A program made the position numbers and the translations under genes. This document shows, one piece after another, positions 301-20,363 of a stretch of DNA of 64,000 nt. Under the pieces are notes generated by a model. It had not been told where the DNA came from, made no database searches, and worked only from the letters and a program-made list of their open reading frames with translations. Source of the DNA: Macrostomum hystrix (lineage: Eukaryota; Animalia; Platyhelminthes). The stretch's first letter is position 1. Each line of letters starts with the position of its first letter. The stretch lies in the NCBI GenBank assembly GCA_950097015.1, contig CATNEN010000014.1, forward strand, positions 868,001 to 932,000. Direction: 5' to 3'.

Positions 301-354
301 CACACGGAGTTGCCTTTCAATGTGCAGCAGTCACTTTTTGTAGGCACTCGTTTT

Positions 355-752
355 TTAAAACACACACGACACGCAAAACTCCTAAAATAGCTCGTAGGAA
401 GAATTGGCAGAGCACAAAATGAACAATTGCAAGAGGGCTGCGGGCAATGGCACATCATTTGGCGACACCAGACCTGCAGCCAGCGAGGAGACAATTCGGC
501 CCATTTCGCTGACTCCTGAGCACACCTACTCACACAGGTGTGTACATCTGCAATCAATTTCTCATCATCAGGCAGTGTACACTGTCACTGTGCCTTGGAG
601 GTTGGCCCCCAAAGGCGCAAATTGCACTACAAGCCCCAAGCCTAATCTCCGCGGCTGCGGCCCAAATGAATGAGGCCTCACCATGGAATCGAGCTCAGGG
701 AGCTTGGTGCGAGAGGCAAGCGCTTTAGACCGCTCTGCCACTCACTCACCCC
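355..752 (-). mobile_element. tRNA-derived SINE in ADAM intron (duplicate at ~14136-14533)
   Basis: A-box TGGCAGAGCGG and B-box GAGCTCGATTCC on the minus strand. The body matches the plus-strand element at 32022-32370. TG-rich tail. Confidence 0.75.
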
Positions 753-894
753 GCAAGTGGGATTCTACAACGTAATTAATAGGTGAAAGTAATTCTAACC
801 TGAGTTGTTCGGCAGCCAAGTGAAAAGTGAAGAATCCCAAGATTGGGTCAGATTCAAGAAGTCAAATCCCAGTTGACTGAGTACCCTGACCTAC

Positions 895-3800
895 TCATCC
901 CCTAGAACGCCACGACAACCGGCCTCGCCGCCGCAGTCGCAGTCCTCGCCGTCTTCCAGAAGGCCGTTGCCGCAGACCGCTGTTGGCCAATCCCAGGCTA
1001 CTGGCAGGCGAAGCCCGCCCGGATAGTCAGCCTCTGGTCTCGGCCACAGCAGGCAGTGACGGACGCCGGAATCCAGGAAGTTCTTCAGGGCTTTCTTTGA
1101 GCATTCCGACCAGCCGATGTTGTGCCACTTGGTGCGATTCAGCGTTTTGGTGTCCATCATGCAGGCCTCATTGGAGTCGTGACACCAGCAGTGGTGGTCT
1201 TGGTATTTGTTATCGTAGTCGACGCCAAGGTTGTATGCCAGGTTCCGTGTCATTATCACCCCGGTGGTGTCGAAGTCGCTGGACGAATGAGACTGGCGTG
1301 GGCAGTCGGAGATATTCGTAATATATTCAATAATTTTATGTGAACCCAGTTTTGGGAGACTGAAAAACCAAGATTAGGGAGGCTGGGGAACCAGGATTTA
1401 GGAGCCTGCGGAATAGAGATTAGAGAGACTGGGAACAGAGATTAGGGAGACTCAGGAACAGAGATTAGGAAGACTGGGAACAGAGATTAGGGAGACTGGG
1501 AACAGAGATTAGGGAGACTGGGAACAGAGATTATGGAGGCTAGGAACAGAGATTAGGGAGACTGGGAACAGAGATTAGGGAGGCTGGGAACAGAGATTAG
1601 GGAGACTGGGAACAGAGAGAAGGGAAACTGCGGAACAGAGATTAGGGAGACTGCGGAACCCAGTATAGGGAGGCTGGTGGGATAGATTTTGGGGAGGCTG
1701 TGGGATAAAGAATTGGGAGACTGGAGATCCAGCGAGGAATTGAAAGAGAGGGTACTGGTCTCCTAATGCATTCTAATATAGGGATCAGTGTCCTCTGCTC
1801 GAAGCCAGTTTGCTAGTTACTTACGACGCTAAAACCAAAGCAATCTTGAATGTTGCACATGCTTTTATTATAGGCTGCGCCTGTCATGTCGTCGAAATTT
1901 CTGGCTCTGAAGTTTGAGTTGATGAAGGTTTTTCTATAATTTCTGGCTCTGAAGTTTGAGTTGATGAAGGTTTTTCTATAATTTCTGGCTCTGAAGTTTG
2001 AGTTGATGAAGCTTTTTCTATAATTTCTGGCTCTGAAGTTTGAGTTGATGAAGGTTTTTCTATAATTTTGGCTATGCACTCGTAATTTTTTTCCGACAGA
2101 AGTGTTTAGTAGATGGGAGTCTACTCGAGATGAATGAGAGTCTGGTAGGTTAAAGTATTGTCGATAAGACAGTCTGGTAGACTGGAGTGTTTTGGATCAG
2201 AGAGTCTGGTATAGATTAAAGCATTGTCATAAGATTGTAAGTCTTTTGTAGAAGGCAATGTGCTATCGGCTGTAGTCTTGCACATAGACAGTGAGCACTC
2301 AAGGCTATCCAATCAGCTCACGTAAGCAGGTGCACACAGTCGTAGTTGTAAGCATTGAAATGCGATATTGTCTTCGATAAATAACGCTTCCATAATCTCA
2401 GCAAGAAATCCTGATCTCGAGTTTTGAGAATGGCGTCAGTATATAAGTCAAAATCTGTACTGCTCATGTGAATTTCCAGCGCGCTGACTACTACGTAGAT
2501 GTCGAAGCGGCGAAATAACTGCAGAAATAGCGAAAATATGTCTCTTATACTGCTCTGAGTACAGTGCAAAAAACAAACTGCAGCTTTATATATCCATAAT
2601 ATTTTATGTATCACCTGTTAGACATGGGTATCACCTGTTAGACATGGGTATCACCTGTTAGACATGGGTATCGCCTGTTAGACATGGGTATCACCTGTTA
2701 GACATGGGTATCACCTGTTAGACATGGGTATCACCTGTTAGACATGGGTATCACCTGTTAGACATGGGTATCACCTGTTAGACATGGGTATCACCTGCTA
2801 GACATGGGTATCACCTGTTAGACATGGGTATCACCTGTTAGACATGGGTATCACCTGTTAGACATGGGTATCACCTGTTAGACATGGGTATCACCTGTTA
2901 GACATGGCCATCACCTGTTAGACATGGCTATCACCTGCTAGACATAGGTGTCACATGTTGGACATGGGTGTCACCTGTTAGACATGGGTATCACCTGTTA
3001 GACATGTGAATCACCTGTTAGGCACTATACTCACGTTGTTGACGATTCCAATAATGCTCTGTACCGCATGAATCACAGCCGATAAGCTCCCGGAGTGCAT
3101 ATTGTACTGCAATGAGAAGTGAGCAGCTGGACCATTACTCTAGTGGAGTTTTTTTGGACCTAAATAAGGCCACATTTTTTCACATCGGAAACGCTAATCA
3201 TTGCTAAGGCCCTCTAGTATCCATGGTTACCCCAATGGCAAACAAAATATCTCTTAATTTGCATAACATCTCGCACAGCAGTAGAATCTCGAGCAACGAG
3301 CAAGCAAAACAGTTTGTAATATTAAAAACTGTCTTGACCACGTTACTCTAGTCGATTGCCTCGCCTAATGTCTATGGTACACCCACATGACCTGGCCTAA
3401 TGTCTATGGTACACCCACATGACCTGGCCTAATGTCTATGGTACACCCACATGACCTGGCCTAATGTCTATGGTACACCCACATGACCTGGCCTAATGTC
3501 TATGGTACACCCACATGACCTGGCCTAATGTCTATGGTACACCCACATGACCAGGCCTAATGTCTATGGTGCACCTACATGACCTGGCCTAATGTCTATG
3601 CTTCTCCCTCAAGTCTTTCCAAAGCTAGTCGCTACTGTTATTATATGCTATATTAACATCAAATTATAAATGTTACACTCACAAACCAATAATCAGCGAT
3701 GATGTAGAGCTGCATAATGAATGGGCCGTCACGACTGAGCACCTTCCTGCTCAGGTCCAGCTTTATGGACCGCATATCGAACTTTTTGAACTTATTGAAC

Positions 3801-6800
3801 CGTGCTAAGCGCCGGTGCCTCTGTATTTGAGTTTTGAAGAAGCAAAGGCGAGTAGAATTAACGGAATTGATTCAGTCAGTCTGTCTGTGTTAGCTTGATC
3901 AGTCCATGGACTGGGTGCCGTCACACTCACTCAAATTTCTATCCGAGCTAATGCTGCTAATGCTGCTAATGCGGTTAGGAGTCCGAAACTCTGCGCCAAA
4001 ACCTCATGAGCATACGCTTTCAATGTTGGGTCACCAAGAAGCATAGAATTTGCAAAGCTAAGCCTCATCTATATAACTCTTGATTTTTAACTGGCTAACA
4101 TGATCAAGCTGAACAGCAACTTGACACTTGAATGGCACCAGTCATAAATACTTTTGCTATTCTGCCCCATTCTATCTGTTGGTCAGCTTTATCAACAATG
4201 GGAACAGCCATCCATCTGACATTATCCTTAATCCTTGAGATATAGAATAGTGACTCATAGAATAATTAGTCACTTTCAAAATTGGGCTCTTGAACTCTAT
4301 TAATCCAAATAAATGGCTTACCTGTAATAAAACGCTGCCACCAAGCATTTTGGTCAGTTGCTGTGGACTTACTGGAAGTTATGGTGAAACCCAAATGCTT
4401 ATTCATTGAGCATCTCAATATATTTCTAAAGTGATGTGAATGAAAGCAAAAATCATACTCACGTGCAGCAATCCGCTTATTCAGCACATCATAGGCCGAT
4501 TCCAATGCTTGACGCTGCTTCCAACCGACACTTGAAGGATACAAGTTGAGCTGGTACACCTGCCAGCTTGAGTCACGCAGCCGCATGCGATGCCCGGTGG
4601 CTTGAATATAGCCCAGGTGAGTGATGTTGATTGACAGCGTGCCACTGTCAATGAGGGTTGGATTCAGCTGCCCGGGTAAATGATCTGCATGGCTGTCTGT
4701 TCTGGGCTGTCTGTTCTGGGGTGTCTGTTCTGGGGTGTCTGATCTGGGCTGTCTGTTCTGGGCTGTCTGTTCTGGGGTGTCTGTTCTGGGGTGTCTGTTC
4801 TGGGCTGTCTGTTCTGGGCTGTCTGTTCTGGGGTGTCTGTTCTGGGGTGTCTGTTCTTGGCTGTCTGTTCTGGGGTGTCTGTTCTAGCGTGTCTGTTCTG
4901 GGCTGTCTGTTCTGGGGTGTCTGTTCTGGGCTGTCGGTTCTGGGCGTCTGTTCTGGGCTGTCTGTTCTGGGCTGTCTGTTCTAGGCTGTCTGTTCTGGGG
5001 TGTCTTTTCTGACGTGTCAGTTTTGGGGTGTCTGATTTGGGTTGTGTATTTCTGGGGTGTCTGATCTGGGTGTCTTCTGAGGTGTCTGTTCTCGGGAGTC
5101 AGTTCTGTTGGCTTTCTGTTCTGGGCTGCCTGTTCTGGGCTGTCTGTTCTGGGGTGTCTGTTCTATGGTGTCTGTTTTGTGGTGTCTGTTTTGAGGTGTG
5201 TGTATTTGGGGTGTCTTTTCTGGGCTGCCTGTTCTGGGCTGTCTGTTCTGGGGTGTCTGTTCTAGGGTGTCTGTTTTGTGGTGTCTGTTTTGAGGTGTGT
5301 GTATCTGGGGTGTCTTTTCTGGGCTGCCTGTTCTGGGCTGTCTGTTCTGGGGTGTCTGTTCTAGGGTGTCTGTTTTGTGGTGTCTGTTTTGAGGTGTGTG
5401 TATTTGGGGTGTCTTTTCTGGGCTGCCTGTTCTGGGCTGTCTGTTCTGGGGTGTCTGTTCTAGGGTGTCTGTTTTGTGGTGTCTGTTTTGAGGTGTGTGT
5501 ATCTGGGGTGTCTTTTCTGGGCTGCCTGTTCTGGGCTGTCTGTTCTGGGGTGTCTGTTCTAGGGTGTCTGTTTTGTGGTGTCTGTTTTGAGGTGTGTGTA
5601 TCTGGGGTGTCTTTTCTGGGCTGTCTGTTCTGGGCGTCTGTTCTGGGCTGTCCGTTCTAGGCTGTCTTCTGGGGCGTCTGCTCTGGGGTGCCTGCTCTAA
5701 GGTGTCTGCTCTGGGATGTCTATTCTGGGCTGTCTTCTGGGTGTCTGATCTGTTCTTGGGTGTGTGTATCTAGGGTGTGTGTACCTGGGGTGTCTGATCT
5801 GTAGTGTCTGCTCTGGGGTATTTGATCTAGGGCTTCTGCTCTGGGGTATTTGATCTAGGGTGACTGCTCTGGGGTATTTGATCTCGGGTGTCTGATCTGA
5901 GGTGTCTGTTAATTCTGGTGTGTCTGATCTGCATATCTGTATGTTCTTGAGTGTCTGTTCTGGGTGTCCGTTCTCACCGCAGCAGGTCAGAGCAGAGTGA
6001 CACAAGGCCTGGCTGAGTCACATTGCCCAACTGGGCAGTCCCAGACTCAATCGGCCACGCTGAGTAGTGGCACTGAGAGCGATGTCGCGATTTGCTGGCC
6101 CGGGATCGACTCCCCACGATTCGAACTGGGAACTCTTCAGGTCTGGAAAAGTATTTAACAAAGAGCTGCTACAAAGAGGCTTGCAGCAATAGGTCGTATT
6201 CGAGCTTCATCAAAAAGTATAAAAGTGCATTTGTGCTTACCTTCCCACCGCCAGGTAGAATGAGAACCGGCGCAGCGATGGCATAGCAACAATCTCTAAG
6301 ACCAAATTTCTGCCGATTTTCTGAAGCGGTAAAATCGAACTCACAATTTTGAAAACATTGAAACAATTTCAAGCCTCCGGTGTGTACCAGCTGGCACAGC
6401 CTTCTGTCGACAGGGGCAGCCTTCCACTGACAGGGCAACCTCCCACTGACAGGGCTAACTTCCACTGACAGGGCCAACTTCCACTGACAGGGCTACCTCC
6501 CACTGACAGGGCTACCCTCCACTGACAGGGCAACCTCCCACTGACAGGGCTACCTTCCACTGACAGGGCAACCTTTCACTGACAGGGCTACCTTCCACTG
6601 ACAGGGCAACCTTCCACTGACAGGGCTACCTTCCACTCACAGGGCAACCTCCCAATGAGGCTCAACCACTCAAATCAACAAAGTTTCATATGTAGGCTTC
6701 ACCTTCTAGCCTTTTGTTGGTGCAAGATTTTAACGCAATGAGGTTAGTAACAGTATGAGTGGTGGCATTTGATGGCACAGAACATATGCATCTGTTCCAA

Positions 6801-7268
6801 TTTGCTCATCGTTAACGATTGTGCACACTCGCTTTAATTTTAGTCCAACAATACTAAATCTCTAAAATATTTTCTTACTAAAAAGGTTTAGTTCAATCAT
6901 TTTAGATTTTGCTTACCCGGCTTGGCTGAACTTCCTGACCATCGTTGGCCTGAAATGTTCTCACCTTGGCCAGCAAGGTTAATGGCCTGGTTGAGTCCGC
7001 TGAAATCGCAGTTGAGAAGGCTAGAAATTCAGTGGCAATCATTGCTTTTGTAGCTTTCCAGCTTGTATTTTGTAAAATATGCTCGCTAATTACTTTTGAA
7101 TTGTGTTGTCATTTCAAATAATGCATTTAAAACTGAGCACACTCAAAATAGTTAAAAGGATTGTGAGTACTCACCGATTGCGCAGTTGGAACACAGCAGG
7201 ATGATAAATTTAGCTATTAATGTGATACAAAGAAGGCTATGGAGTTCACTGGCATGACTTATTGGCAT
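895..7268 (-). CDS. ADAM/reprolysin-like protein, copy 1 (catalytically degenerate; 3' exons lie left of position 1)
   Basis: Phase-compatible GT-AG exons: 7268-7175 (signal peptide MPISHASELHSLLCITLIAKFIILLCSNCAI), candidate prodomain exons 7020-6917 and 4559-4463, 3820-3683 (furin-like RHRR then IMQLYIIADYWF), 3106-3035, 2518-2322 (..YDCVHLLT), 1933(or up to 2059)-1825 (GAAYNKSMC), 1292-895 (zinc-box equivalent TRNLAYNLGVDYD, CMM Met-turn, CGNGLLEDGEDCDCG disintegrin start). Prodomain splicing not fully resolved. Confidence 0.85.
1400..1660. repeat. 22-bp minisatellite GGGAGACTGGGAACAGAGATTA (also 15160-15340)
   Basis: Tandem units visible in both ADAM copies. Confidence 0.9.
1896..2063 (-). 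repeat. 4 x 42-bp tandem repeat spanning an ADAM splice acceptor
   Basis: Unit aatttctggctctgaagtttgagttgatgaaggtttttctat, coding KTFINSNFRARNYR. Single copy in paralog 2. Confidence 0.95.
2611..3020. repeat. 20-bp minisatellite TCACCTGTTAGACATGGGTA (~20 units; ~13 units at 16198-16470)
   Basis: Tandem units seen directly. Confidence 0.95.
3364..3600. repeat. 32-bp minisatellite GCCTAATGTCTATGGTACACCCACATGACCTG (also 17026-17292)
   Basis: Tandem units seen directly. Confidence 0.95.
4690..5960. repeat. Complex GT-rich minisatellite (CTGTTCTGGGCTGT/GTGT variants; also 18366-19445)
   Basis: Tandem ~14-15-bp units with higher-order repeats. Source of the spurious VLGCLFW-type ORFs. Confidence 0.9.
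6408..6655. repeat. 19-bp minisatellite CCACTGACAGGGCTACCTT (copy 1 only)
   Basis: Tandem units, absent from the paralogous region near 19890. Confidence 0.9.
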
Positions 7269-9877
7269 GTTTACACAAAAAGTTGTAGCGATTCAACCAG
7301 TGGAATAGTCAATCGTCAATGTATATAAAATTCCTGCAATTTGAAACCCGATGTATATAGTTTCAGGATTGGAAAGGCTCATAGACTAAAACAGCGGGCA
7401 CGGAAAGTCGATTTGTGCCCGCTGCCGGGGGATTTCGTCTATGTCCAAAGCAACGGAAATATTGCTGCAAAGCCAAGAAATCATTAGAGAGCTGCTATCT
7501 ATTGATGCAAGGGATGGAGGGATGAGACTCAGCGGCAGAAAGCTGCGTAAAGACAATCATTCCGAACAAGTTTTGGACAAATCGAGATGAGACATTAAGA
7601 AACTTGAGCATGTCCTTAAAGTCCGCTCGCACCGGCGGGACACAACGCCTGTGAGGTATGAGTCAGTCCAGGCCCACGGGCTAAGGTCTGCGATGCCTCA
7701 CACCTGCGCAGTCGCTTTTTGAGCAGGCTTGGCAGGAAGCATCCCTGTGCCTTCGGGTACAGGAATCCCTCCACGCTGTCCCGTCAGCTGATCCATGGGT
7801 ACACGTCCCACGAGTGTTCAATTAAAACTCGTTCGCCACAAATGGAAAACAACTTTTCTAATAGATCTTGATGTAACTCTTATTCGCCACTAATTGTTTC
7901 AAGCAGCTTTGTTACTTATAACTTATTACTTATAACTTATTACTTACTTATTACTTATAACTTGGTCTGGTCGTTCAAAAAATCAACTTCGGCTTATAAC
8001 GGGTTTATGAGCGGTTTATAAGCCCCTACGATAAGAGATTTATACGAAAGCTTTCGCCGTTTTTTAATTCTGTTAGAACACAACTGTATACATATAAAAC
8101 ATATTTTTTATCAATTTCTGTTGCAAGATAAATTTAGCCTGAGTCATTGGGGAGAAACAGCTAGAAGGTTCAGTTCAGAGCATTATCGAGTAGAGTCGCG
8201 TTGTTGTTCTTGTGTTGAGGTTATCGAGATTTTGTTAAGTGAGTTACCAGTGCGAATTGTGAATTGAATATTGAATTGAATCAAGTACAGTACCTGGCAG
8301 GGGAATTAATCGTTCATTGCTTTCTCTTGTTAACTAATTAACACTTAAATATCAGCTGTTTAGCTTGGGCTTTTGAATCGTCTTGTCTTCGTTATTTTCG
8401 AGTTACGGCAATAGAGTCTCTCGCAAAGAGTAGGACACCCGACCTCATTTAGGAATCTCAACGAGTAGTAGGAGTTAGCAGAACCCTGCCGACACTGCGG
8501 AGATAGGAGGCTATCTCGCCAGTGTATTTTGGAGTGTGGAGGGGCGCCGAAAATCTCAGAACAGAGGAGGAATGGGATAGGAGGAAAGCATTGGGGTGGG
8601 GTGGGGTGTGTCGTCCAATCCGAGACTGGAGGGTGGGGAGGCATGGGGTGGGTGGGTGCCTGTGTCACAGTGCAGGGATGAACTGATGGGATGCCGGCCT
8701 ACCTGCTATAGCAGAACCCTGCCGACACTGCGGAGATAGGAGGGCGGCCTAATGCATGTAGATAGATAGTAGAGGCCGGCCTATCTCTTTGCATTGGGGA
8801 GGGGTTAACACAGCTGGGATAGGAGGAGAGGCCGGCCTATCTCTTTGCATTTGCTAAACTTAGCACAGGCCTACACGTTTTCCCCTCCCCTGAACACTAA
8901 AGGAGAAGAGGGTTAGTTCAACTCTGACGCACTTGCACTGTGGGGGGATAGGCGGCAATGCAAAAAGGATAGGAAGGATGGCTGAGCCAATCAGGTTAGA
9001 GGGTATGCGTTCTGCCCCACCTGCACTGGAGCGCCAGCCAGGTAAGAGATTTTATTTTTTAGCGGTGATATGGCTGTGACTCGCAAGTGGGAAGGCAGAT
9101 AACAGTGGAAGATGGTCAGGCGCGCTGCAGAGAGTGGGCCGCACGCACACGGGCTATGGTTTGCTGGGGTGTGGGGGCGAAGCCCCCACATTTTTTACCA
9201 ACTGAAAAACCCATTGTTCTTTAAAACAATGTTCAATTTGTGTAAAGTTAGTATTTTTCCACAGCACTGGTGAGCTATTTTGGAGCGGTCGCAACCTTGG
9301 CAAAAGCCAAATATATTGATAAAGCCAGAGGAGAGAATTGGATAGCGCTAATGAGTACTCAGTTCAACTCTGCCACACTTAAGAAATGGCGTAAAAAATG
9401 TAGTGAGTAGTTCTTCAGTACAAGAGTGTAAAAGGCTAAGACAATGAGCATTCAGCCTTTGTAGGGGGTGTGGGGGGCAATTAATAACTCTGCCTTTGCA
9501 GCCAATCTCTTTACACTGGGTACAGCTAGAGGAGGAAGAAGATAGGAGGAAAGCATTGGGGTTGGGTGGGGTGTGGCGCCCAATCCGATACTGGAGGGTT
9601 GGGAGGCATCGGGAGGGTGTGTGCCTGTGTCACAGTGCAGGGATGAACTGATGGGATGCCGGCCTATCTGCTATAGCAGAACCCTGCCGACACTGCGGAT
9701 ATAGGAGGTTGCCCGGCAGTGTATTTTGGAGTTTGGAGGGGCGCCGACAATCTCAGAACAGAGGAGTAATGGGATAGGAGGAAAGCATTGGGGTGGGGTG
9801 GGGTGTGTCGTCTAATCCTACTTACCTACATATCTAGTTTAAGCTCCATCACAGGACAAACACCCACCCCAACTCTA

Positions 9878-9916
9878 GCCAATCAGAATCGAGCACACAT
9901 TTTGGATGGTATATAA
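9878..9916 (+). promoter_or_regulatory. CCAAT box plus TATA box upstream of the PC4-like ORF
   Basis: AGCCAATCAG at ~9878-9887 and TATATAA at 9910-9916, ~80 bp before the ATG at 9997. Confidence 0.55.
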
Positions 9917-9996
9917 CCCCTCAAAAATCGTTAGGAAAGGAGCAAGTTTTCTCAGCTCGTAATTTTTCTGATCTTAGCTTTTGACATTAGCTAGCG

Positions 9997-10736
9997 ATGG
10001 ACATCTGCGACGGTTGTAAGATTCAGATTCAAGAGTACGAAGGCTTGAAGTACATAGCGATAAGAAAGTTCTACCGCCACGGCAGCACTGCAAGTCTGAA
10101 ACCTGGCGTCCCTGGCTTCAACCTGAATGTTTGCCAATGGGAAAAGCTGAAGCAACTGAAGCGGTCGCTCGTAGTGTCTGCTCTCAAAAGCGAGTGCAAG
10201 GTGGTGAAACTAGGCTTTGATAAGTTTATCGAAGTCAGGGATGGCATCATCTGGCTCAAGCGGCTGCCTGAGGACTGCTGCGAGGAGTTCATGAAGCGTA
10301 ACGCCGTACCGCTGACCCCACCGCTGTGGAAGAAGCTGTGGCACAACGCATCATGGATATAGACGGCCAGTTGTCAGCTCCCTTCAAGGACATGCGGACG
10401 AAGTACGAGCTGGAGTCAGATGAGGAAGAGCAGGACACGAAGCCCGTCCTGGAGGCCGAGAAACCTGAAGGCAATGGTGGAGACGAAGACGAGATCGGCT
10501 CGCCTAGAATGCTGCAGATCGACAACGAGGCTGCCACATCCACGCCGCTTCCCGTGGCTAGCGCTGGGGATGGACGGATCCCGTCTCGGGACTCGGACTT
10601 GCGGGAGGACCCGGTGTGGTACCAGTTCCGGGCGGCTGCGGCTGCGGCGGCCAGCGGTAGCAGGAAGCGCAAACAGCCGTTTCCACTTCGTCGGCAGGAG
10701 GCAATGAAGCTTACCAGGCTGCACTTCGATGAGTGA
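9997..10736 (+). CDS. Intronless PC4/Sub1-like ssDNA-binding protein (two PC4-like modules plus acidic tail with RKRK); either one gene with a -1 frameshift near 10338 or two overlapping ORFs (9997-10362 and 10353-10736)
   Basis: KIQIQEYEGLKYIAIRKFY..LKPGVPGFNLNVCQWEKLK matches the PC4 pattern (V.V.efrG..y.dIR..y..G.lkPg.kGI.L...QW..L). Second module ..AVPLTPPLWKKL continues in the shifted frame as VAQRIMDIDGQL. Confidence 0.7.
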
Positions 10737-10951
10737 CTGAACAGTGTGCTCTAATGCGTCTGACTGCTTTTGTGCTCAAATCAGCTGCTCAATTTGTAAT
10801 TTTGACAGTGTTAAAAGCCAGCTACTTATTGTTTTTTCCCATTTATTCAGTGTTCACAATTGCTTCTGCATTTGTATGGTGCTGGTTGTTTTTCGACGCA
10901 GGTCGATTTTCTGTTACAGTGAATTACAAAAAACCTAAGAAAATGAATTGC

Positions 10952-11536
10952 TCATGCTAGAGAAAGCAAGCCTTCCGCTCTTTCACACTCAGCCTGCAGA
11001 TTCGGCCCATCGTCTCTTCGCAGCATTTTGCCTCGAACTTGCGGCCTCCGAATGGCTGCAGCAGCAACAGTGGCGTCTGTCACAGAAGCTGTAGGACCGA
11101 TCACATCAGCCTCAATGCTCTGCAGTGCAGACTGGATAGAGTCATGCCGCAGGCGCTTTCCTCCATGTTGCGGTGCAGCATCAGCAGCAGTGCGCTTTTT
11201 CGCCGCCGCGCCTTTGCGAGTGAGGCTGCTGGGCATCAGGAAGTCATTGTCGCTGCCAGCTTCTTCCTCATCAGGTTCTGGCCGTCTATTGATTACGTCC
11301 TCGAATACCTGGGTGAACACACCAGAACGTGCAGTTGGCCGCTCATTCTCAGCCCGCTGTTTTTGCTGGTCGCGCCGCTGTTTCTCCTGTAGCTGCTTCG
11401 CAGCCCTGATGATTTTCCAGCGCTGGGCCTCCCTTTCCTTCTCCGTCGAAGGCACAATTTTATGCTCCTTGTGTTTGGCAGGCACCTGCTTGGCCTTCAC
11501 CTGCTGGCCTTCACCTGCCGCACTGGCTGCAGGCAA
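10952..11536 (-). CDS. Hypothetical basic/acidic low-complexity protein inside the Polinton-like element (true start unresolved)
   Basis: 194-codon open frame with coiled-coil and NLS-like tracts (KKRTAA, GGKRLR). TATAAATA near 11739-11746 and a minus-strand AATAAA near 10820. No in-frame ATG at the 5' end. Confidence 0.45.
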   Translation of the reverse strand: MPAASAAGEGQQVKAKQVPAKHKEHKIVPSTEKEREAQRWKIIRAAKQLQEKQRRDQQKQRAENERPTARSGVFTQVFEDVINRRPEPDEEEAGSDNDFLMPSSLTRKGAAAKKRTAADAAPQHGGKRLRHDSIQSALQSIEADVIGPTASVTDATVAAAAIRRPQVRGKMLRRDDGPNLQAECERAEGLLSLA

Positions 11537-12709
11537 GCCAGCGAGTTACTTAATTGGCAGGTGTTGTTGCTATGGTGTCGCGGGGAGACACCCCCAATTG
11601 TGCATGCTTCGCAAGTCAAGCACACCTCATAGAGGTCTTTGTGACAACTTTTAAATATTGGCGATTTCAACATTTTTCTAGACAGTGCTTGTGCTTACCA
11701 GGTGAATATTTGCATTCAAATTATGAATTTCAAGTCTTTATTTATATCCATAATCCAACCCCCATACCCCCTCACCCCTTACACTCCTCCCCATTCATAA
11801 TAAAATTAAATCAGCAAAAAAACCAACATTTAATTCCTGTTTCAAGATCGCCGCTAAGCCGCCCCTTGGTAACCAAACGGAATCGAACTCATAAAATCAA
11901 ATCGTCCCGGCGACCCTCAATCCCAAACAACCGTTACACTAAACTGTTTTTGAGTTCACAAACTGTGAATTCGAAGTCATAAATTTTTTCATTTGAAAAA
12001 TACCGCCCGGCGGCGTCGGCAGGGTTCTGCAAACAGATAGGCCGACACCCCATCTGTATATTCCCATGCCTCCTATCTCCACAGTGTCGGCTGTGTCCTC
12101 TGCTGTGGAATAGGCAGCGCCTATAGGCAGAGCAATGGAAAGTGTGGCAAACTAGCGAAAACAAAACGCATACAGATTTGCCAGGCATCCCATCTTTGTA
12201 TTTCCGTGCCTCCTATCTCCACAGTGTCGGCAGGGTTCTGCTATAGCAGGTAGGCCGGCATCCCATCAGTTCATCCCTGCACTGTGACACAGGCACCCAC
12301 CCACCCCATGCCTCCCCACCCTCCAGTCTCGGATTGGACGACACACCCCACCCCACCCCAATGCTTTCCTCCTATCCCATTCCTCCTCTGTTCTGAGATT
12401 TTCGGCGCCCCTCCACACTCCAAAATACACTGGCGAGATAGCCTCCTATCTCCGCAGTGTCGGCAGGGTTCTGCTAACTCCTACTACTTCAACGCAAAGA
12501 GAGACCTAAGTCAAAATATCAGAAGCGCATACAATCCTGAGCCGAGGCCGGACAACGTAATTTTGCGTCACATTGAAAGTTTCCATAACTGAAAAACGAG
12601 CGAACATTTCTATTCAACGTCATTTGTCCTACAAAACATTAGAATTGCATTTAAGTCATTGCATTGTTTGCAAAATTTAAAGGCTGCATTTTCAAACTAA
12701 GGCTGTGAC

Positions 12710-15700
12710 CTAGTAGACGGTGACTGCGGCGGCTGCCAAGCTGGCCAGGCTTACCAGGATGGCGGCGGAAACTCCGCCAGTTCTCTGGCCGTCACTAAAC
12801 GGTCCGGGCGGACCGCTGTCGATGCTGCCACCGTTGCCGGCCAACTGGCAGTCGGGCGGGGCGAATCCTGGCGGACAGTGGCAGTGGCCGCGCGAGTTCA
12901 CGGTGCCACCGTTTTGGCAGGTGACATTGCCAGCCACAGCGGCTCGGTTACGAATCTCCGAGGCGGATTGGCAAGTTCTGTTGAAGCACATTTGCTCGCC
13001 GGTACGGTTTCCGCAACGCGCACCGTCTGGCACTCGATCGGGCGGCCCGGGTACCCGCGGATGGTAGCCGCAAATGGCATTGCCGCAAGGTTCTGGACCT
13101 GTCCCGGTTATATCCGGAACGCAGTTCGCCAAATTCTCAATCGGTTGCACAAAGGTGCCGCACGTTACCATATCACATTCCTTGCTTTTTTTCGGGCACC
13201 AGGAACTCTGCAAGCAGTGGAGAAGTGTGATGTGTTGCTAAAAAGTGAACTAGAAAGCGAATCGGAATCGCTCAAGAAGAGACACAATAAATAGTGAGGT
13301 GAGCTTTACGGCTGACTTAAAAGGCAGTCAATATCGTTTTGCAGGAAAATAAGCAATTCAATCAAAGTGAATAAAAAGGGTTAGTAGTTTTAAGAGCTTC
13401 CGATAATGAGGGAATTCCTCTGACTCACGGCATCGCGTGCCGTCGGTCCCCAGAGTAACTGACACTGAGTCTGGGCGGAGCCGCACAGACCGTTGGCGCA
13501 GAAGTTGCTGCCGCACGGTGTCCCGTCTCTGGCAGCGAAATCGGCAGGGCAGGTTGAGTCGACGCCGTTACAGAATTCCGGCAGGTCGCATTGTCCTTTG
13601 GCGGCGCGGCAAACGGTGCCAGTCGGGCGCGGCTGACAGACCGTCAAGTCGCAGCAGCGCCCTGCGGCGCAGGCAGCGGATTCGGCCAGCTTGCAGGAGG
13701 TGGCGTTGCAGCAGTCGTTGCCTCTGTGAAACGATTGGTGAGCAGATAACTAACGACTTGTTTGCTACCTCTGACACAAAGCTCGAGACTTTGGATCTTG
13801 TTAGTTTCGAAATAGATGAAAGAGTTGTAGAAAAAAGAATCGATATTGCACGAAATTCACTTGGCACCGCCGAAGCTATTGCGCAGCGCTTCCAAATCAT
13901 GTGTACAGCTGTTCAGTCCGTGGACTGAGTGCTGCCACTCCTACCGAATTTTTCACGCCAGCAGATGCTGCTAGTCAATTTACAGCTGGGTGAAATGACG
14001 CAATGAGGGAATTGATTTAAGCGTCTGGCTCAGAGACACAGGTTATTTTCTTCGGGCTGCGATTCGAACTCCCGAACTACTCACACGGAGTTGCCTTTCA
14101 ATGTGCAGCAGTCACTTTTTGTAGGCACTCGTTTTTTAAAACACACACGACACGCAAAACTCCTAAAATAGCTCGTAGGAAGAATTGGCAGAGCACAAAA
14201 TGAACAATTGCAAGAGGGCTGCGGGCAATGGCACATCATTTGGCGACACCAGACCTGCAGCCAGCGAGGAGACAATTCGGCCCATTTCGCTGACTCCTGA
14301 GCACACCTACTCACACAGGTGTGTACATCTGCAATCAATTTCTCATCATCAGGCAGTGTACACTGTCACTGTGCCTTGGAGGTTGGCCCCCAAAGGCGCA
14401 AATTGCACTACAAGCCCCAAGCCTAATCTCCGCGGCTGCGGCCCAAATGAATGAGGCCTCACCATGGAATCGAGCTCAGGGAGCTTGGTGCGAGAGGCAA
14501 GCGCTTTAGACCGCTCTGCCACTCACTCACCCCGCAAGTGGGATTCTACAACGTAATTAATAGGTGAAAGTAATTCTAACCTGAGTTGTTCGGCAGCCAA
14601 GTGAAAAGTGAAGAATCCCAAGATTGGGTCAGATTCAAGAAGTCAAATCCCAGTTGACTGAGTACCCTGACCTACACATCCCCTTTAACGCCAGGACAAC
14701 CGACATCGCCACCGCAGTCGCAGTCCTCGCCGGGTTCCAGAAGGCCGTTGCCGCAGACCGCTGTTGGCCAATCCCGGGCTACTGGCAGGCGAAGCCCGCC
14801 CGGATAGTCAGCCTCCGGTCTCGGCCACAGCAGGCAGTGACGGACGCCGGAATCCAGGAAGCCCAGCAGGGCTTTCTTTGAGCAGTCCGACCAGCCGAAG
14901 TTGTTCCAATCGATGCCATTCATCTTTTCGTGGCTCATCATCATGCAGGCTGATTGGTCACACTTGCATTGGCCTGGGTATTTGTTATCGTATTCGACGC
15001 CAAGGTTGTATGCCAGGTTCTGTGTCATTATCACCCCGGTGGAGGCGGAGTAGCTCTTCTGACGAGACTGGCGTGGGCAGTCGGAGATATTCGGAATATT
15101 AAATGCTTTATGTGAACCAAGATTAGGGAGGCTGGGGAACCAGGATTTGGGAGCCTGCGGAACAGAGATTAGGGAGACTGGGAACAGAGATTAGGGAGAC
15201 TGGGAACAGAGATTAGGGAGGCTGGGAACAGAGATTAGGGAGACTGGGAACAGAGATTAGGGAGACTGGGAACAGAGATTAGGGAGACTTGGGAACAGAG
15301 ATTAGGGAGACTCGGGAACAGAGATTAGGGAGACTGCGGAACCCAGTATAGGGAGGCTGGTGGGATAGATTTTGGGGAGGCTGTGGGATAAAGAATTGGG
15401 AGACTGGAGATCCAGCGAGGAATTGAAAGCGAGGGTACTGGTCTCCTAATGCATTCTAATATAGGGATTAGTGTCCTCTGCTGGAAGCCAGTTTGCTAGT
15501 TACTTACGAGGCTAAAACCAACGCACTCTCCCCATTTGCACATGCTATTCTTAGTGGCTTCGCCTGTCCAGTCGATGGGATCGGGATTTCCGGCTCTGAA
15601 ATTTGAGTTGATAAAGGTTTTACTATAATTTTTGGCTATGCACTCGTAATTTTTTACCCGACAAAGTATTGTCGATAAGAGAGTCTGGTCGACTGGAGTC

Positions 15701-18700
15701 TTTTGGATAAGAGAGTCTGGTCGACTGGAGTCTTTTGGATAAGAGAGTCTGGTAGACTGGAGTCTTTTGGATAAGAGAGTCTGGTAGACTGGATTGTTTT
15801 GGATAAGACAGTCTGGTCGATTGGAGTCTTTTGGATAAGAGAGTCTGGTATAGATTAAACCATTGTCAATAAGATAGGAGTCTTTTGTAGAAGGCAATGT
15901 GCTATCGGCTGTAGTCTTGCACATAGACAGTGAGCACTCAAGGCTATCCAATCAGCTCACGTAAGCACGTGCACACAGTCGTGGTCCAGTCCCTTTCTAT
16001 CGTTCCTCGTTTCTCGGATGGTATCTCGATAATTCGTCCAATCTTCTCGCTGCCAATTCGCGTTTTCCATGCCAATTCCGATAATTTCCAGCGCGCTGAC
16101 TACTACATAAATGTCGAAGCGGCGAAATAACTGCAGAAATAGCGAAAAGATTCCTCTTGTACTGCTTTAAAAAAATTACTTTTATAAATGTAAATTGTAT
16201 CACCTGTTAGACATGGGTATCACCTGTTAGACATGGCTATCACCTGTTAGACATAAGTGTCACCTGTTAGACATGGCTATCACCTGTTAGACATGGGTAT
16301 CACCTGTAAGACATGGGTATCACCTGTTAGACATGGGTATCACCTGTTAGACATGGGTATCACCTGTTAGACATGGGTATCACCTGCTAGACATGGGTAT
16401 CACCTGTTGGACATGGGTATCACCTGTTAGACATGGGTATCACCTGTTAGACATGTGAATCACCTGTTAGACACTATACTCACGTTGTTGACGATTCCAA
16501 TAATGCTCTGTACCGCATGAATCACAGCCGATGAGCTCCCGGAGTGCATCTTGTACTGCAATGAGAAGTGAGCAGCTGGACCATTACTCTAGTAAAGTTT
16601 TTTTGGACCTAAATAAGGCCACATTTTTTCACATCGGAAACGCTAATCATTGCTAAGGCCCTCTAGTATCCATGGTTACCCTTAATGGCAACCAAAATAT
16701 CTCTAAAAGTTACACATTAATTTAATTTAATTTAATTTAATTTAAATTACACATAAATTAACAACTGTTAATTTAAATTGTTCTAATGATTATAATATGG
16801 ATATCGATAGTTATAAATAAAAAAACTAATTAACTTCGAATACGAATTTAAATGTATTGAATAATTCATCACCTTGTCACAGAAAAAAACCGGAGTGGGT
16901 CAAATGAGTCCACGTTGTGCTTAATTTGCATAGCATCTCGCACATCATTAGAATCTCGAGCTACGAGCAAGCAAATCAGTTTGCAATATTAAAAACTGTC
17001 TTGACCACTTTACTTCGATTGCCTCGCCTAATGTCTATGGTACACCCACATGACCTGGCCTAATGTCTATGGTACACCCACATGACCTGGCCTAATGTCT
17101 ATGGTACACCCACATGACCTGGCCTAATGTCTATGGTACACCCACATGACCTGGCCTAATGTCTATGGTACACCCACATGACCTGGCCTAATGTCTATGG
17201 TACACCCACATGACCTGGCCTAATGTCTATGGTACACCCACATGACCTGGCCTAATGTCTATGGTACACCCACATGACCTGGCCTAATGTCAATGCTTCT
17301 CCCTCAAGTCTTTCCAAAGCTAGTCGCTACTGTTATTATATGCTATATTAACATCAAATTATAAATGTTACACTCACAAACCGATAGTCTGCGATGATGT
17401 AGAGCTGCATAATGAATGGGCCGTCACGACTGAGCACCTTCCTGCTCTGGTCCAGCTTTATGGACCGCATATCGAACTTTTCGGAGCGCCGGTGCCTCTG
17501 TATTTGAGTTTTGAACAAGCAAAGGCGAGTAGAATTAACGGAATTGATTCAGTCAGTCTGTCTGTGTTAGCTTGATCAGTCCATGGACTGGGTGCCGTCA
17601 CACTCACTCAAATTTCTATCCGAGCTAATGCTGCTAATGCTGCTAATGCGGTTAGGAGTCCGAAACTCTGCGCCAAAACCTCATGAGCATACGCTTTCAA
17701 TGTTGGGTCACCAAGAAGCATAGGATTTGCAAAGCTAAGCCTCATCTATATAACTCTTGATTTTTAACTGGCTAACATGATCAAGCTGAACAGCAACTTG
17801 ACACTTGAATGGCACCAGTCATAAATACTTTTGCTATTCTGCCCCATTCTATCTGTTGGTCAGCTTTATCAACAATGGGAACAGCCATCCATCTGACATT
17901 ATCCTTAATCCTTGAGATATAGAATAGTGACTCATAGAATAATTAGTCACTTTCAAAATTGGGCTCTTGAACTCTATTAATCCAAATAATGGCTTACCTG
18001 TAATAAAACGCTGCCACCAAGCATTTTGGTCAGTTGCTGTGGACTTACTGGAAGTTATGGTGAACCCCATCTACTTATTCATTGAGCATCTCAATATATT
18101 TCTAAAGTGATGTAAATGAAAGCAAAAATCATACTCACGTGCAGCAATCCGCTTATTCAGCACATCATAGGCCGATTCCAATGCTTGACGCTGCTTCCAA
18201 CCGACACTTGAAGGATACAAGTTGAGCTGGTACACCTGCCAGCTTGAGTCACGCAGCCGCATGCGATGCCCGGTGGCTTGAATATAGCCCAGGTGAGTGA
18301 TGTTGATTGACAGCGTGCCACTGTCAATGAGGGTTTGATTCAGCTGCCCGGGTAAATGATCTGCATGGCTGTCTGTTCTGGGCTGTCTGTTCTGGGGTGT
18401 CTGTTCTGGGGTGTCTGTTCTGGGCTGTCTGATCTGGGTTGTCTGTTCTGGGGTGTCTGTTCTGGGCTGTCTTTTCTGGGGTGTCTGTTTTGGGGTGTCT
18501 GTTCTAGGGTGTCTGTTCTGTGGTGTCTGTTCTGGACTGACAGTTCTAGGCTGTCTGTTCTGGGGTGTCTGATTTGGGTTGTGTATTTCTGGGGTGTCTG
18601 ATCTCGGGAGTCAGCTCTGCATGGCTTTCTGTTCTGGGCTGTCTGTTCTGGGCTGTCTGTTCTGGGGTGTCTGTTCTAGGGTGTCTGTTCTGTAGTGTCT

Positions 18701-20363
18701 GTTCTGAGGTGTGTGTATCTGGGGTGTCTTTTCTGGGGTGTCTGTTCTAGGGTGTCTGATCTGGGTTGTCTGTTCTAGGGTGTCTGTTCTGGGCTGTCTT
18801 TTCTGGGGTGTCTGTTCTGGGCTGTCTGTTCTGGGGTGTCTGATCTGGGGTGTCTGTTCTAGGGTGTCTGTTCTGTAGTGTCTGTTCTGAGGTGTGTGTA
18901 TCTGGGGTGTCTTTTCTGGGGTGTCTGTTCTAGGGTGTCTGATCTGGGTTGTCTGTTCTAGGGTGTCTGTTCTGGGCTGTCTTTTTTGGGGTGTCTGTTC
19001 TGGGCTGTCTGTTCTGGGGTGTCTGATCTGGGCTGTCTGTTCTGGGCTGTCTGTTCTGGGCTGTCTGTTCTGGGGTGTCTGTTCTGGGCTGTCTGTTCTG
19101 AGCGTCTGTTCTGGGCTGTCTGTTCTGGGTGTCTGTTCTGGGGCGTCTGATCTGGGGTGTTTGTATCCTGGGTGTCTGATCTGGGGTGTCTGCTCTGGGG
19201 TGCCTGCTCTAAGGTGTCTGCTCTGGGATGTCTGAACTGCATGGCTGTCTATTCTGGGCTGTCTTCTGGGTGTCTGATCTGTGGTGTCTGCTCTCGGGTA
19301 TCTGATCTGGGGCTTCTGCTCTGGGGTATTTGATCTAGGGTGTCTGCTCTGGGGTATTTGATCTCGGGTGTCTGATCTGAGGTGTCTGTTAATTCTGGGG
19401 TGTCTGATCTGCATATCTGTATGTTCTTGAGTGTCTGTTCTGGGTGTCCGTTCTCACCGCAGCAGGTCAGAGCAGAGTGACACAAGGCCTGGCTGAGTCA
19501 CATTGCCCAACTGGGCAGTCCCAGACTCAATCGGCCACGCTGAGTAGTGGCACTGAGAGCGATGTCGCGATTTGCTGGCCCGGGATCGACTCCCCACGAT
19601 TCGAACTGGGAACTCTTCAGGTCTGGAAAAGTATTTAACAAAGAGCTGCTACAAAGAGGCTTGCAGCAATAGGTCGTATTCGAGCTTCATCAAAAAGTAT
19701 AAAAGTGCATTTGTGCTTACCTTCCCACCGCCAGGTAGAATGAGAACCGGCGCAGCGATGGCATAGCAACAATCTCTAAGACCAAATTTCTGCCGATTTT
19801 CTGAAGCGGTAAAATCGAACTCACAATTTTGAAAACATTGAAACAATTTCAAGGCTCCGGTGTGTACCAGCTGGCACAGCCTTCTGTCGAAATGGTTTCC
19901 GGGAATTTGAAGCATTTGCACCAAGCCAAACCCCTCCAGCTCACGAACAGATGATGAAACAGTCATGTCATTAATGTAAAATTTAGTTCAATCATTTTAG
20001 ATTTTGCTTACCCGGCTTGGCTGAACTTCCTGACCATCGTTGGCCTGAAATGTTCTCACCTTGGCCAGCAAGGTTAATGGCCTGGTTGAGTCCGCTGAAA
20101 TTGCAGTTGAGAAGGCTAGAAATTCAGTGGCAATCATTGCTTTTGTAGCTCTCCAGCTTGTATTTTGTAAAATATGCTCGCTAATTACTTTTGAATTGTG
20201 TTGTCATTTCAAATAATGCATTTAAAACTGAGCACACTCAAAATAGTTAAAAGGATTGTGAGTACTCACCAATTGCGCAGTTGGAACACAGCAGGATGAT
20301 AAATTTAGCTATAAATGTGATACAAAGAAGGCTATGGAGTTCACTGGCATGACTTATTGGCAT
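12710..20363 (-). CDS. ADAM/reprolysin-like protein, copy 2 (signal, prodomain, degenerate metalloprotease, disintegrin, Cys-rich, EGF, C-terminal hydrophobic tail)
   Basis: Exons 20363-20270 (signal), candidate 18235-18139, 17497-17378 (RHRR), 16555-16484, 16130-15961, 15622-15508, 15067-14676 (TQNLAYNLGVEYD; CGNGLLEPGEDCDCG), 13723-13429 (disintegrin CCNATSCKL..CRAAKGQCDLPEFCNG), 13207-12710 (Cys-rich, EGF CQNGGTVNSRGHCHCPPGFAPPDC, hydrophobic tail, TAG). Intron phases match from 17497 to the stop. Confidence 0.88.

What the first reader, a model, noticed from the sequence alone, without database searches (positions are those of the whole stretch)
8464..12488. 4-kb mini-Polinton/Maverick that keeps only a PC4-like gene and one orphan ORF
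Seen: AGTAGT termini, 280-bp TIRs differing at one position I noticed, and a perfect 6-bp TSD (TCAACG). Established: AG/AGT-repeat termini, long TIRs and 6-bp TSDs are Polinton/Maverick hallmarks, and autonomous elements are typically 15-20 kb with pPolB, integrase, ATPase, protease and capsids. None of those genes is here. Instead there are two small convergent genes, each with TATA-like upstream motifs. Inference: a recently inserted satellite-like or defective-genome derivative, mobilised in trans, whose retained cargo may not be neutral (for example an ssDNA-binding helper for protein-primed replication).
Basis: partly seen in the sequence, partly recalled or inferred. Interest (0 to 1): 0.8.

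Follow-up and report, generated by a model that had tools for sequence, protein, structure and literature searches.

The report
Gene-poor mini-Maverick (Polinton) insertion
A 4-kb mobile element with the exact end signature of Maverick/Polinton virus-like transposons has lost every replication, integration and capsid gene, keeping only two small accessory genes, one of them a PC4-like DNA-binding gene that is frameshifted in this copy; it is a new example of a known kind of defective element.

Summary
Window 8464-12488 (4,025 bp) has 280-nt terminal inverted repeats with one mismatch, ends 5'-AGTAGT...ACTACT-3', and an exact 6-bp target duplication (TCAACG). These are the three published structural hallmarks of Mavericks/Polintons, including the commonest end-motif (AGT)2//(ACT)2. 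No polymerase, integrase, ATPase, protease or capsid gene is present, so it is a non-autonomous derivative and not a Polinton by definition.

It carries two convergent genes, each with a TATA-like box upstream. The + strand gene (9997-10736) is one gene, not two ORFs. Its roughly 250-aa relatives are uninterrupted, expressed as polyadenylated mRNAs in other organisms and under purifying selection. The window copy has one frameshift. Its N-terminal 130 residues or so form a two-unit PC4-like fold. The best viral structural match is the 'MOSUB' protein of a lancelet adintovirus, an animal Maverick-type virus, so the cargo is probably a retained viral accessory gene. The - strand gene remains an orphan.

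Not testable here: an autonomous partner with the same repeats, other copies, and an empty site. It is a new member of a known kind, of moderate interest.

The parts
8458..8463 (.). Left copy of the 6-bp target-site duplication (TCAACG)
8464..8743 (+). Left terminal inverted repeat, 280 nt. It starts with the (AGT)2 end-motif at 8464-8469. The 35-nt sub-repeat lies at 8476-8510 and 8709-8743 (233-nt spacing). A G-run (G4-like) lies at 8631-8656.
8744..9527 (.). Internal segment with no recognisable gene. It holds only small ORFs without family hits, and CCAAT-like motifs.
9528..9818 (+). Third, internal, partial copy (about 1.25 units) of the 233-nt TIR repeat unit, 93-95 % identical to the left TIR. 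It lacks the terminal AGT tip and lies just upstream of the PC4-like gene's promoter.
9910..9915 (+). TATA-like box 87 nt upstream of the ATG of the PC4-like gene
9997..10736 (+). PC4-like accessory gene, treated as one gene. It matches intact relatives of about 250 aa end to end but in two reading frames: one frameshift and no internal stop. The N-terminal half has the two-unit PC4-like fold. The C-terminal half is an acidic, disordered stretch followed by a basic tail.
10737..10951 (.). Spacer of 215 bp between the two convergent genes, with AATAAA for the - strand gene at 10842-10847. By inference, this is the place where the core modules of a full-length element were lost.
   Evidence: inference from PMC8097293
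10952..11673 (-). Orphan gene, seen as two overlapping ORFs in different frames: 11497-11673 (58 aa, ATG start) and 10952-11536 (194 aa, no ATG near its start). How they connect is unresolved. The product is predicted as a long helix plus disorder and is rich in A/R/E/Q/K. GC by codon position favours the - strand as the coding strand.
11741..11746 (-). TATA-like box 68 nt upstream of the - strand ATG at 11673
12010..12103 (-). Degenerate sub-terminal copies of the 35-nt motif inside the right end (76-88 % identical)
12209..12488 (-). Right terminal inverted repeat, 280 nt, 279/280 complementary to the left one. It ends with (ACT)2 at 12483-12488.
12489..12494 (.). Right copy of the 6-bp target-site duplication (TCAACG)

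Best explanation
The segment is a non-autonomous, internally deleted derivative of a Maverick/Polinton (adintovirus-type) virus-like element, inserted recently into an invertebrate-type animal genome.

Shown:
- It keeps the cis-acting ends: 280-nt TIRs that begin with the AGT-AGT reiteration and carry a 35-nt sub-repeat every 233 nt.
- It is flanked by the 6-bp duplication that an rve-type integrase leaves.
- It has no enzyme or capsid gene of its own.

Inferred:
- Polymerase, terminal protein and integrase came from a full-length element in the same cell.
- The AGT reiteration serves the jumping-back step of protein-primed initiation, as proposed for Mavericks.
- The two convergent genes are the accessory regions that lie next to the TIRs in full-length elements. 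A single internal deletion that removed both core modules brought them together.

The + strand gene encodes a two-unit PC4-like fold, a family that binds single-stranded or unwound nucleic acid. Its likeliest role in the parent virus is as an ssDNA-binding or transcription cofactor. In this copy it is frameshifted, so here it is probably a passenger.
For: Structure:
- A 6-bp TSD with a long TIR is also reported for the Anolis Polinton.
- Rival 6-bp-TSD superfamilies have other termini.
- No core gene is present.

The PC4-like gene:
- PC4 domain above the Pfam cut-off; 14 of 15 family members hit PF02229.
- The AF2 model has pLDDT above 90 over residues 1-130.
- PDB matches are PC4/Sub1 (TM 0.8 for one unit) and MRP1/2 and PURA for both units.
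- The best BFVD match is adintovirus 'MOSUB': E 1.1e-5, probability 1.0, 155 aligned columns.
- The family is absent from named or annotated proteomes and is intronless, and a genomic relative carries a premature stop. That fits a virus or transposon gene.

Category: a non-autonomous Polinton family name exists in the literature (Polinton-1N1_DR).
Against: - No autonomous element with these TIRs, no second copy and no empty site could be examined. TIR-motif scans of the viral and metagenome collections found nothing, but those collections hold no eukaryotic genomes.
- The link to adintovirus MOSUB is structural only (14 % identity, TM 0.41/0.50), and the PC4 fold is widespread, including in phages and giant viruses.
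- The published end-motif survey concerns vertebrates, whereas CpG content here argues for a non-vertebrate host.
- The relatives of the PC4-like gene sit on 1-2.6-kb contigs with no informative neighbours, so they could be host genes.
- No helper is visible in the 64-kb window. Its only rve hit is a Gypsy-type integrase with an H2C2 zinc finger.
Confidence: 0.78

Rival explanations
1. A satellite lineage rather than a dead-end deletion product. On this reading it is a 4-kb replicon that persists and spreads as its own family, dependent on a helper Maverick. Its PC4-like gene is maintained by selection for the satellite's own benefit, either in replication or in interference with the helper.
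For: - The PC4-like family is conserved, expressed and constrained across several organisms.
- Both genes keep their own TATA-like boxes and one keeps a poly(A) signal.
- The ends are nearly intact.
- Small TIR-bounded derivatives of Polinton-like viruses that lost the capsid module, the transpovirons, are known.
Against: - The window copy of the gene is frameshifted.
- No second copy of the 4-kb form is known.
- The relatives' contigs show no TIRs, and their UTRs are unrelated to the element.
Confidence: 0.15
2. A Maverick-ended non-autonomous element that captured host genes. The PC4-like gene would be a host gene, or its retrocopy, picked up between the TIRs and not a viral accessory gene.
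For: - Relatives are seen as about 1-kb polyadenylated mRNAs with dN/dS of 0.1-0.35.
- The PC4 fold is ubiquitous in cellular proteins.
Against: - About 14 sequence clusters of the family were found among roughly 15 billion proteins. None has a name or comes from an annotated genome.
- The gene is intronless in the genomic contigs L004 and L005 as well.
- Canonical host PC4 proteins form a clearly different group with the KPGKKG motif.
- The best viral structural match is an adintovirus protein.
Confidence: 0.12
3. A non-autonomous element of another TIR superfamily that makes 6-bp duplications (IS3EU/GingerRoot, Ginger2/TDD, or Dada), moved by a cut-and-paste transposase.
For: - The 6-bp TSD is shared with those superfamilies. 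That Dada makes 6-7-bp duplications is my own recollection.
- Sub-terminal repeats are common in cut-and-paste elements.
Against: The termini are AG...CT with an AGT reiteration, not TA..TA, TG..CA or TGTNR. The exact (AGT)2//(ACT)2 motif is the commonest Maverick signature.
Confidence: 0.05
4. Not a mobile element: an ordinary host gene pair bracketed by a chance or recombination-made inverted duplication.
For: The window is full of duplications and minisatellites.
Against: A 280-nt inverted repeat at 99.6 % identity sits exactly between identical 6-bp direct repeats and begins with the Maverick end-motif. The joint chance is about 1 in 10^7 even before the repeat itself is counted.
Confidence: 0.01

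Closest known systems
Maverick/Polinton elements with the 5'-(AGT)2//(ACT)2-3' end-motif (vertebrate survey, PMC8097293; Polinton definition in PMC5499653)
   Same: Same end-motif, a perfect 6-bp TSD, a TIR length within the 46-1,447 bp range, intronless genes, and accessory genes next to the TIRs.
   Different: The element is 4.0 kb against 12.7-24.6 kb. It has no pPolB, integrase, ATPase, protease, capsid, PZ, PW or PM genes. The host looks like an invertebrate.
Non-autonomous Polinton families of Repbase (e.g. Polinton-1N1_DR, named in PMC9341505)
   Same: The same category: an element with Polinton ends and without the autonomous gene set.
   Different: I could not see the content of those families. 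Here two promoter-bearing accessory genes are retained. The family itself is new to the collections searched.
'MOSUB' protein of Branchiostoma lancelet adintovirus (BFVD A0A5H3CIS2)
   Same: It is the best structural match of the PC4-like protein among viral models (E 1.1e-5, 155 aligned columns). It is of similar size (203 aa against about 250 aa) and comes from a Maverick-type animal virus.
   Different: Only 14 % identity, with TM 0.41/0.50. The sequence was not fetched because animal viruses are barred, so homology at the sequence level is untested. The name occurs in no paper of the library.
PC4/Sub1 transcription cofactor (PF02229; PDB 1pcf, 4usg, 4agh) and the phage T5 PC4-like protein (4bg7)
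   Same: The first unit superposes on PC4 at 1.1-1.6 Å (TM 0.66-0.84 of the target). The Pfam score is above the cut-off. The fold binds ssDNA.
   Different: Two beta-sheet-plus-helix units lie in one chain (as in PURA and MRP1/2) rather than a homodimer of one unit. The loop motif is PGxPG rather than KPGKKG. There is a long acidic, disordered region and a basic C-terminal tail.
Transpovirons (about 7-kb TIR-bounded linear elements derived from Polinton-like viruses by gene loss; PMC5499653)
   Same: A small, TIR-bounded, capsid-less derivative of the Polinton-centred virus class that depends on a helper.
   Different: Transpovirons keep a helicase-inactivated-polymerase fusion and a Zn-ribbon gene and ride giant viruses. 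Neither gene is present here, and this element is chromosomally integrated with a TSD.

Membership tests
Polinton/Maverick (autonomous, as defined) | [quoted passage not shown] | tested here: not met
   No Pfam hit other than PC4 in 15 ORFs of the element. 4 kb leaves no room for one.
Polinton/Maverick (autonomous, as defined) | Encodes a retrovirus-like (rve) integrase | tested here: not met
   The only rve hit in the window belongs to a Gypsy-type element at 26.0-26.9 kb.
Polinton/Maverick (autonomous, as defined) | Morphogenetic module (major and minor capsid proteins, ATPase, protease) | tested here: not met
Polinton/Maverick (structural hallmarks) | End-motif 5'-(AGT)2//(ACT)2-3' or (AG)3//(CT)3 | tested here: met
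   AGTAGT at 8464-8469 and ACTACT at 12483-12488. Criterion from PMC8097293.
Polinton/Maverick (structural hallmarks) | Perfect 6-bp target-site duplication | tested here: met
   TCAACG on both sides, not extendable.
Polinton/Maverick (structural hallmarks) | Long terminal inverted repeats (46-1,447 bp in the survey) | tested here: met
   280 nt, 279/280.
Non-autonomous Polinton/Maverick derivative | Shares its TIRs with an autonomous element of the same genome | not testable with these tools
   No eukaryotic genome DNA collection is available. Motif scans of the viral and metagenome contigs were empty.
Non-autonomous Polinton/Maverick derivative | Internal sequence derived from a full-length element | tested here: inconclusive
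   The fold match of the PC4-like protein to adintovirus MOSUB is the best viral hit, but identity is 14 % and no direct sequence comparison was made.
PC4/Sub1 domain family (PF02229) | Sequence match above Pfam's gathering score | tested here: met
   29.1 bits against 25 for the window ORF. 14 of 15 family members match at E<=0.01.
PC4/Sub1 domain family (PF02229) | PC4 fold (curved beta-sheet plus helix) | tested here: met
   Foldseek to 1pcf, 6ycs and 4agh: probability 1.0, rmsd 1.1-1.6 Å over 53-61 columns. The model has pLDDT above 90.
IS3EU/GingerRoot | TA..TA (rarely TG..CA) termini with a 6-bp TSD | tested here: not met
   The termini are AG..CT. Criterion from PMC10045372.
Ginger2/TDD | TGTNR termini and an AT-rich RTATAY target | tested here: not met
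   The termini are AGTAG and the target is TCAACG. Criterion from PMC2836005.
Transpoviron | SF1 helicase fused to an inactivated polymerase, plus a Zn-ribbon gene | tested here: not met
   No such domains. Criterion from PMC5499653.

The most novel reading that the evidence does not exclude
The element represents a self-perpetuating satellite of animal Mavericks/adintoviruses. On this reading it is a 4-kb minimal replicon that keeps only origin-bearing ends plus a PC4-like ssDNA-binding gene, which selection maintains for the satellite's own replication or for interference with its helper. That would make it an animal counterpart of transpovirons or of defective-interfering genomes. It would also make the two-unit PC4-like family the long-missing single-strand-binding factor of Maverick protein-primed replication.
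Probability: 0.12. Interest if true: 0.75.

Novelty: new member of a known kind. Interest (0 to 1): 0.45.

Why it matters
Mavericks/Polintons are usually catalogued through their polymerase and integrase, so short derivatives are invisible to gene-based surveys. This copy shows that the end-motif, TSD and TIR alone can identify them.

It also draws attention to an unstudied, conserved, expressed family of two-unit PC4-like proteins. The best viral structural counterpart of that family is an unpublished-in-text accessory gene of an adintovirus. If the family proves to be a regular Maverick gene, it is a candidate for the ssDNA-binding function that protein-primed, strand-displacing replication needs and that has not been assigned in these elements.

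For genome annotation, it explains a pair of 'orphan' ORFs and a young insertion next to a host exon candidate.

Tried and rejected
1. Splice model for the + strand gene. I first thought a short GT-AG interval joined the two ORFs. This is rejected, because uninterrupted relatives align straight through, so it is a frameshift and not an intron. The two frames were never joined.
2. Word-based protein searches with each piece found nothing because the relatives' lengths fall outside the tool's length range. The exhaustive HMMER search then found them.
3. Exact look-ups of the window ORFs: not on record.
4. Empty site within the window. The window has a large duplication (1-7459 and 13782-20554), but it stops short of the element's flanks, and no empty site was found.
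5. TIR-motif scans of viral and metagenome contigs and protein-to-locus scans: nothing.
6. RNA genes and tRNAs: none in the window.
7. Orphan gene:
- No Pfam, PHROG or PDB match.
- No counterpart next to the relatives, except a weak match (E 0.03) in the syntenic position on L004.
- The single-sequence model is too poor (pTM 0.26) for a fold search, which I left out.
8. Host identity. Run accessions are not mentioned in the library. Only general clues were obtained: CpG observed/expected 0.66-1.0, an EGF-like exon candidate and Gypsy fragments. A DAN-domain hit turned out to lie in a minisatellite translation and is discarded.
9. Assembly-error idea for the frameshift. The net length difference is not a multiple of 3 and is not beside a homopolymer of 4 or more, so a simple homopolymer error is not favoured. 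Read-level data are still needed.

- In my private working I located the frame change and candidate GT-AG intervals by coordinate.
- The script cut the two pieces at bounds taken from the separate alignments and printed their lengths.
- I recalled from memory a short adenovirus end repeat while thinking.
- Searches scanned the viral collection before the adintovirus link was known. They returned nothing, and I made no further such scans afterwards.

None of these places or letters is repeated in the notes or in this report.

Full report
**1. The observation**

- Window 8464-8743 and 12209-12488 are inverted repeats of 280 nt with exactly one mismatch and no further perfect extension.
- The element begins AGTAGTAGGAGT and ends ACTCCTACTACT.
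- The six bases outside each end are TCAACG. The duplication cannot be lengthened or shifted by a base, so its length is exactly 6.
- The element is 4,025 bp long.
- Each TIR consists of a 12-nt tip, then a 35-nt motif that recurs 233 nt later (8476 and 8709, mirrored at 12442 and 12209).
- A third, partial copy of the same 233-nt unit (93-95 % identical, without the tip) lies inside the element at 9528-9818. Degenerate motif copies lie at 12010-12103.
- All five good copies of the motif in the 64-kb window are inside the element, with none expected by chance.

**2. Gene content**

No ORF of the element matches any Pfam family except PC4, and none matches PHROGs convincingly. There is therefore no polymerase, integrase, packaging ATPase, protease or capsid gene, and no recognisable remnant of one.

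Two convergent genes remain.
- *The + strand gene.* It has a TATA-like box at 9910 and its ATG at 9997.
- *The - strand gene.* It has a TATA-like box at 11741, its ATG at 11673, and AATAAA about 110 nt past its stop. GC content by codon position favours the - strand over the overlapping + strand ORFs as coding at 10952-11536.

**3. The PC4-like gene is one gene with one frameshift**

*Finding the relatives*
- The first ORF (9997-10362) scores 29.1 bits on PF02229 against a cut-off of 25, and finds PC4/Sub1 chains in the PDB.
- Word searches found no relatives, because the relatives' lengths lay outside the tool's range.
- The exhaustive HMMER search found 65 hits.
- Three are close: P0001 (251 aa, 76 % identical), P0002 (247 aa) and P0003.
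- About ten more align over the whole 120 residues.
- The other fifty or so are ordinary multi-domain PC4 proteins with the canonical KPGKKG loop and are not this family.
- A word search with P0001 added P0068 and P0069.

*The gene model*
- The second + strand ORF of the window (10326-10736, another frame) aligns with the C-terminal half of P0001 (E 2e-25).
- tblastn of P0001 covers window 9997-10733 in two frames and covers residues 1-251 of P0001.
- The gene is therefore a full-length homologue carrying one frameshift and no internal stop.
- My earlier splice idea is refuted, because uninterrupted relatives align through the interval.
- The net length difference from the closest relative is not a multiple of three and is not next to a homopolymer run.
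Each piece was handled alone, by reference.

**4. The gene family**

- All members are unnamed, or 'hypothetical protein', on contigs of 0.7-2.6 kb from Logan, JGI and ENA samples. None comes from an annotated genome.
- L006 and L007 end in AATAAA followed by an A-run, so they are polyadenylated transcripts.
- L004 and L005 are genomic and intronless. L004 carries one in-frame stop.
- DNA similarity to the window is confined to the coding region.
- Pairwise dN/dS among intact relatives is 0.12-0.35.
- For the window's first piece against relatives it is 0.08-0.09, and for the second piece 0.26-0.42.
- dS is saturated, so all these ratios are rough.
- The family is thus expressed and constrained, and the frame change in the window copy is recent or an error.

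**5. Fold**

An AlphaFold2 model of P0001 was built with the 15-sequence family alignment.
- Residues 1-130 have pLDDT above 90. They form two successive units of three to four strands plus a helix.
- Residues 133-207 are disordered and acidic, followed by a helix at 212-229 and a basic tail.
- Conservation is concentrated in residues 1-130. There, 27 columns have at least 80 % share of one residue; elsewhere there are none.

Foldseek against the PDB gives two kinds of match.
- PC4 and Sub1 match one unit (rmsd 1.1-1.6 Å, TM 0.66-0.84 of the target).
- The two-unit PC4-like proteins MRP1/2 and PURA match both units (131-137 columns).

Foldseek against viral predicted structures gives 'MOSUB [Branchiostoma lancelet adintovirus]' as the best hit (E 1.1e-5, probability 1.0, 155 columns, TM 0.41/0.50, 14 % identity). 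Uncharacterised phage and giant-virus proteins follow. Adintoviruses are the animal Maverick/Polinton-type viruses (PMC8502044). The name MOSUB appears in no paper of the library. I did not fetch that protein because animal viruses are barred.

**6. What kind of element it is**

*Published criteria for Mavericks*
- They also have perfect 6-bp TSDs, TIRs of 46-1,447 bp and sizes of 12.7-24.6 kb.
- Accessory-gene regions flank the two core modules.
- The end reiteration is expected to serve the jumping-back step of protein-primed replication (PMC8097293).
- A lizard Polinton likewise has a 6-bp TSD and a 584-bp TIR.

*How the window element compares*
- It meets all three structural criteria exactly.
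- The other superfamilies with 6-bp duplications end differently: IS3EU/GingerRoot in TA..TA and Ginger2 in TGTNR.
- Polintons 'by definition' encode the polymerase and the integrase (PMC5499653), so this is not a Polinton proper but a non-autonomous derivative.
- That category exists in Repbase nomenclature (Polinton-1N1_DR).
- The anatomy is TIR, inward-facing accessory gene, 215-bp spacer, inward-facing accessory gene, TIR. One internal deletion removing both core modules would leave exactly this. That step is inference.

**7. How it most likely works**

*Shown:* intact cis ends, a 6-bp staggered-cut footprint, and no enzymes of its own.

*Inferred:*
- Replication and integration functions were supplied by a full-length element.
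- The AGT reiteration and the 35-nt sub-repeats are the sites those proteins use.
- The PC4-like protein binds single-stranded or unwound DNA in the parent virus, either in strand-displacement replication or in transcription. I put the replication-helper role at about 0.3.
- In this copy the gene is frameshifted and so probably inert.

The - strand product is a basic/acidic protein predicted as a long helix plus disorder. It has no relatives, and how its two ORFs connect is unresolved.

**8. Surroundings**

- The window is a repeat-rich, invertebrate-type animal sequence. CpG observed/expected is 0.66-1.0.
- It is dense with minisatellites.
- Gypsy-type fragments lie at 21.5-23.4 and 26.0-29.0 kb.
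- A 7.4-kb duplication (1-7459 and 13782-20554) brackets the 6.3-kb stretch that holds the element.
- An EGF-like cysteine-rich ORF followed by a hydrophobic stretch lies 225 bp from the right end.
- No Polinton core gene is seen among the window's larger ORFs.

**9. Limits**

No eukaryotic genome DNA can be searched here, so the autonomous partner, further copies and the empty site are untested. The adintovirus link is structural only. The contigs of the relatives are too short to show their context. One step is referred.

**10. Verdict**

The Maverick-derived, recently inserted, non-autonomous nature is well supported (0.78). Trans-mobilisation and a functional cargo are untested, and the cargo gene is broken in this copy.
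- Novelty: a new member of a known kind.
- Interest: 0.45. The interest lies chiefly in the unstudied two-unit PC4-like family and its possible place in Maverick replication.

Noticed in passing
window 1-7459 and 13782-20554: Large direct duplication (about 80-99 % identical in blocks, each copy with internal minisatellites). The 6.3-kb spacer between the copies holds the element. The duplication stops about 1 kb short of the element's left end.
   Followed up: partly
window 21521-23404 (+) and 26015-29027 (-): Two Gypsy-type retroelement fragments (RVT_1, RT_RNaseH, Integrase_H2C2, rve). Their domains are spread over overlapping ORFs in different frames, so both look decayed.
   Followed up: partly
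window 2.5-6.7, 15.1-19.5, 37.2-40.1, 41.8-44.2, 45.4-46.7, 48.9-55.1 and 59.2-59.8 kb: Exceptional density of minisatellite arrays with 14-32-nt units and strong strand skews. Several long 'ORFs' are merely translations of these arrays, including the one that gave a weak DAN-domain hit.
   Followed up: partly
window 12713-13213 (-): ORF with an EGF-like cysteine pattern (weak EGF_2 and Notch EGF matches) followed by a hydrophobic, membrane-span-like stretch. It is a possible host exon 225 bp from the element's right end, so the element may sit in or beside a host gene.
   Followed up: partly
window 422-745 and 14203-14526 versus 32024-32643: A short repeat family of about 110-350 nt, present in both copies of the duplication and, inverted, twice near 32 kb (76-90 % identical). 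It was not classified.
   Followed up: no
window 8933-9410 (+), inside the element: Two small ORFs (8933-9079 and 9270-9410) are separated by a stretch with donor-like and acceptor-like signals, and a 20-nt motif is repeated at 8915 and 9361. They could be a third small gene or a remnant. No family hit was found.
   Followed up: partly
window 8631-8656, 9596-9617 and 12296-12321: G-quadruplex-like G-runs (C-runs on the right arm) occur once in each TIR and once in the internal repeat copy.
   Followed up: no
L004:2-230: The genomic relative of the PC4-like gene is preceded by two copies of a 140-nt direct repeat. Each copy contains a CCATATATGG palindrome and a TGACGT motif. This recalls the repeat unit just upstream of the window gene.
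   Followed up: no
proteins P0004-P0011 and others: A sizeable set of unnamed 280-500-aa proteins carries three or four tandem canonical PC4 domains. They are unrelated to the element's family beyond the domain itself.
   Followed up: no
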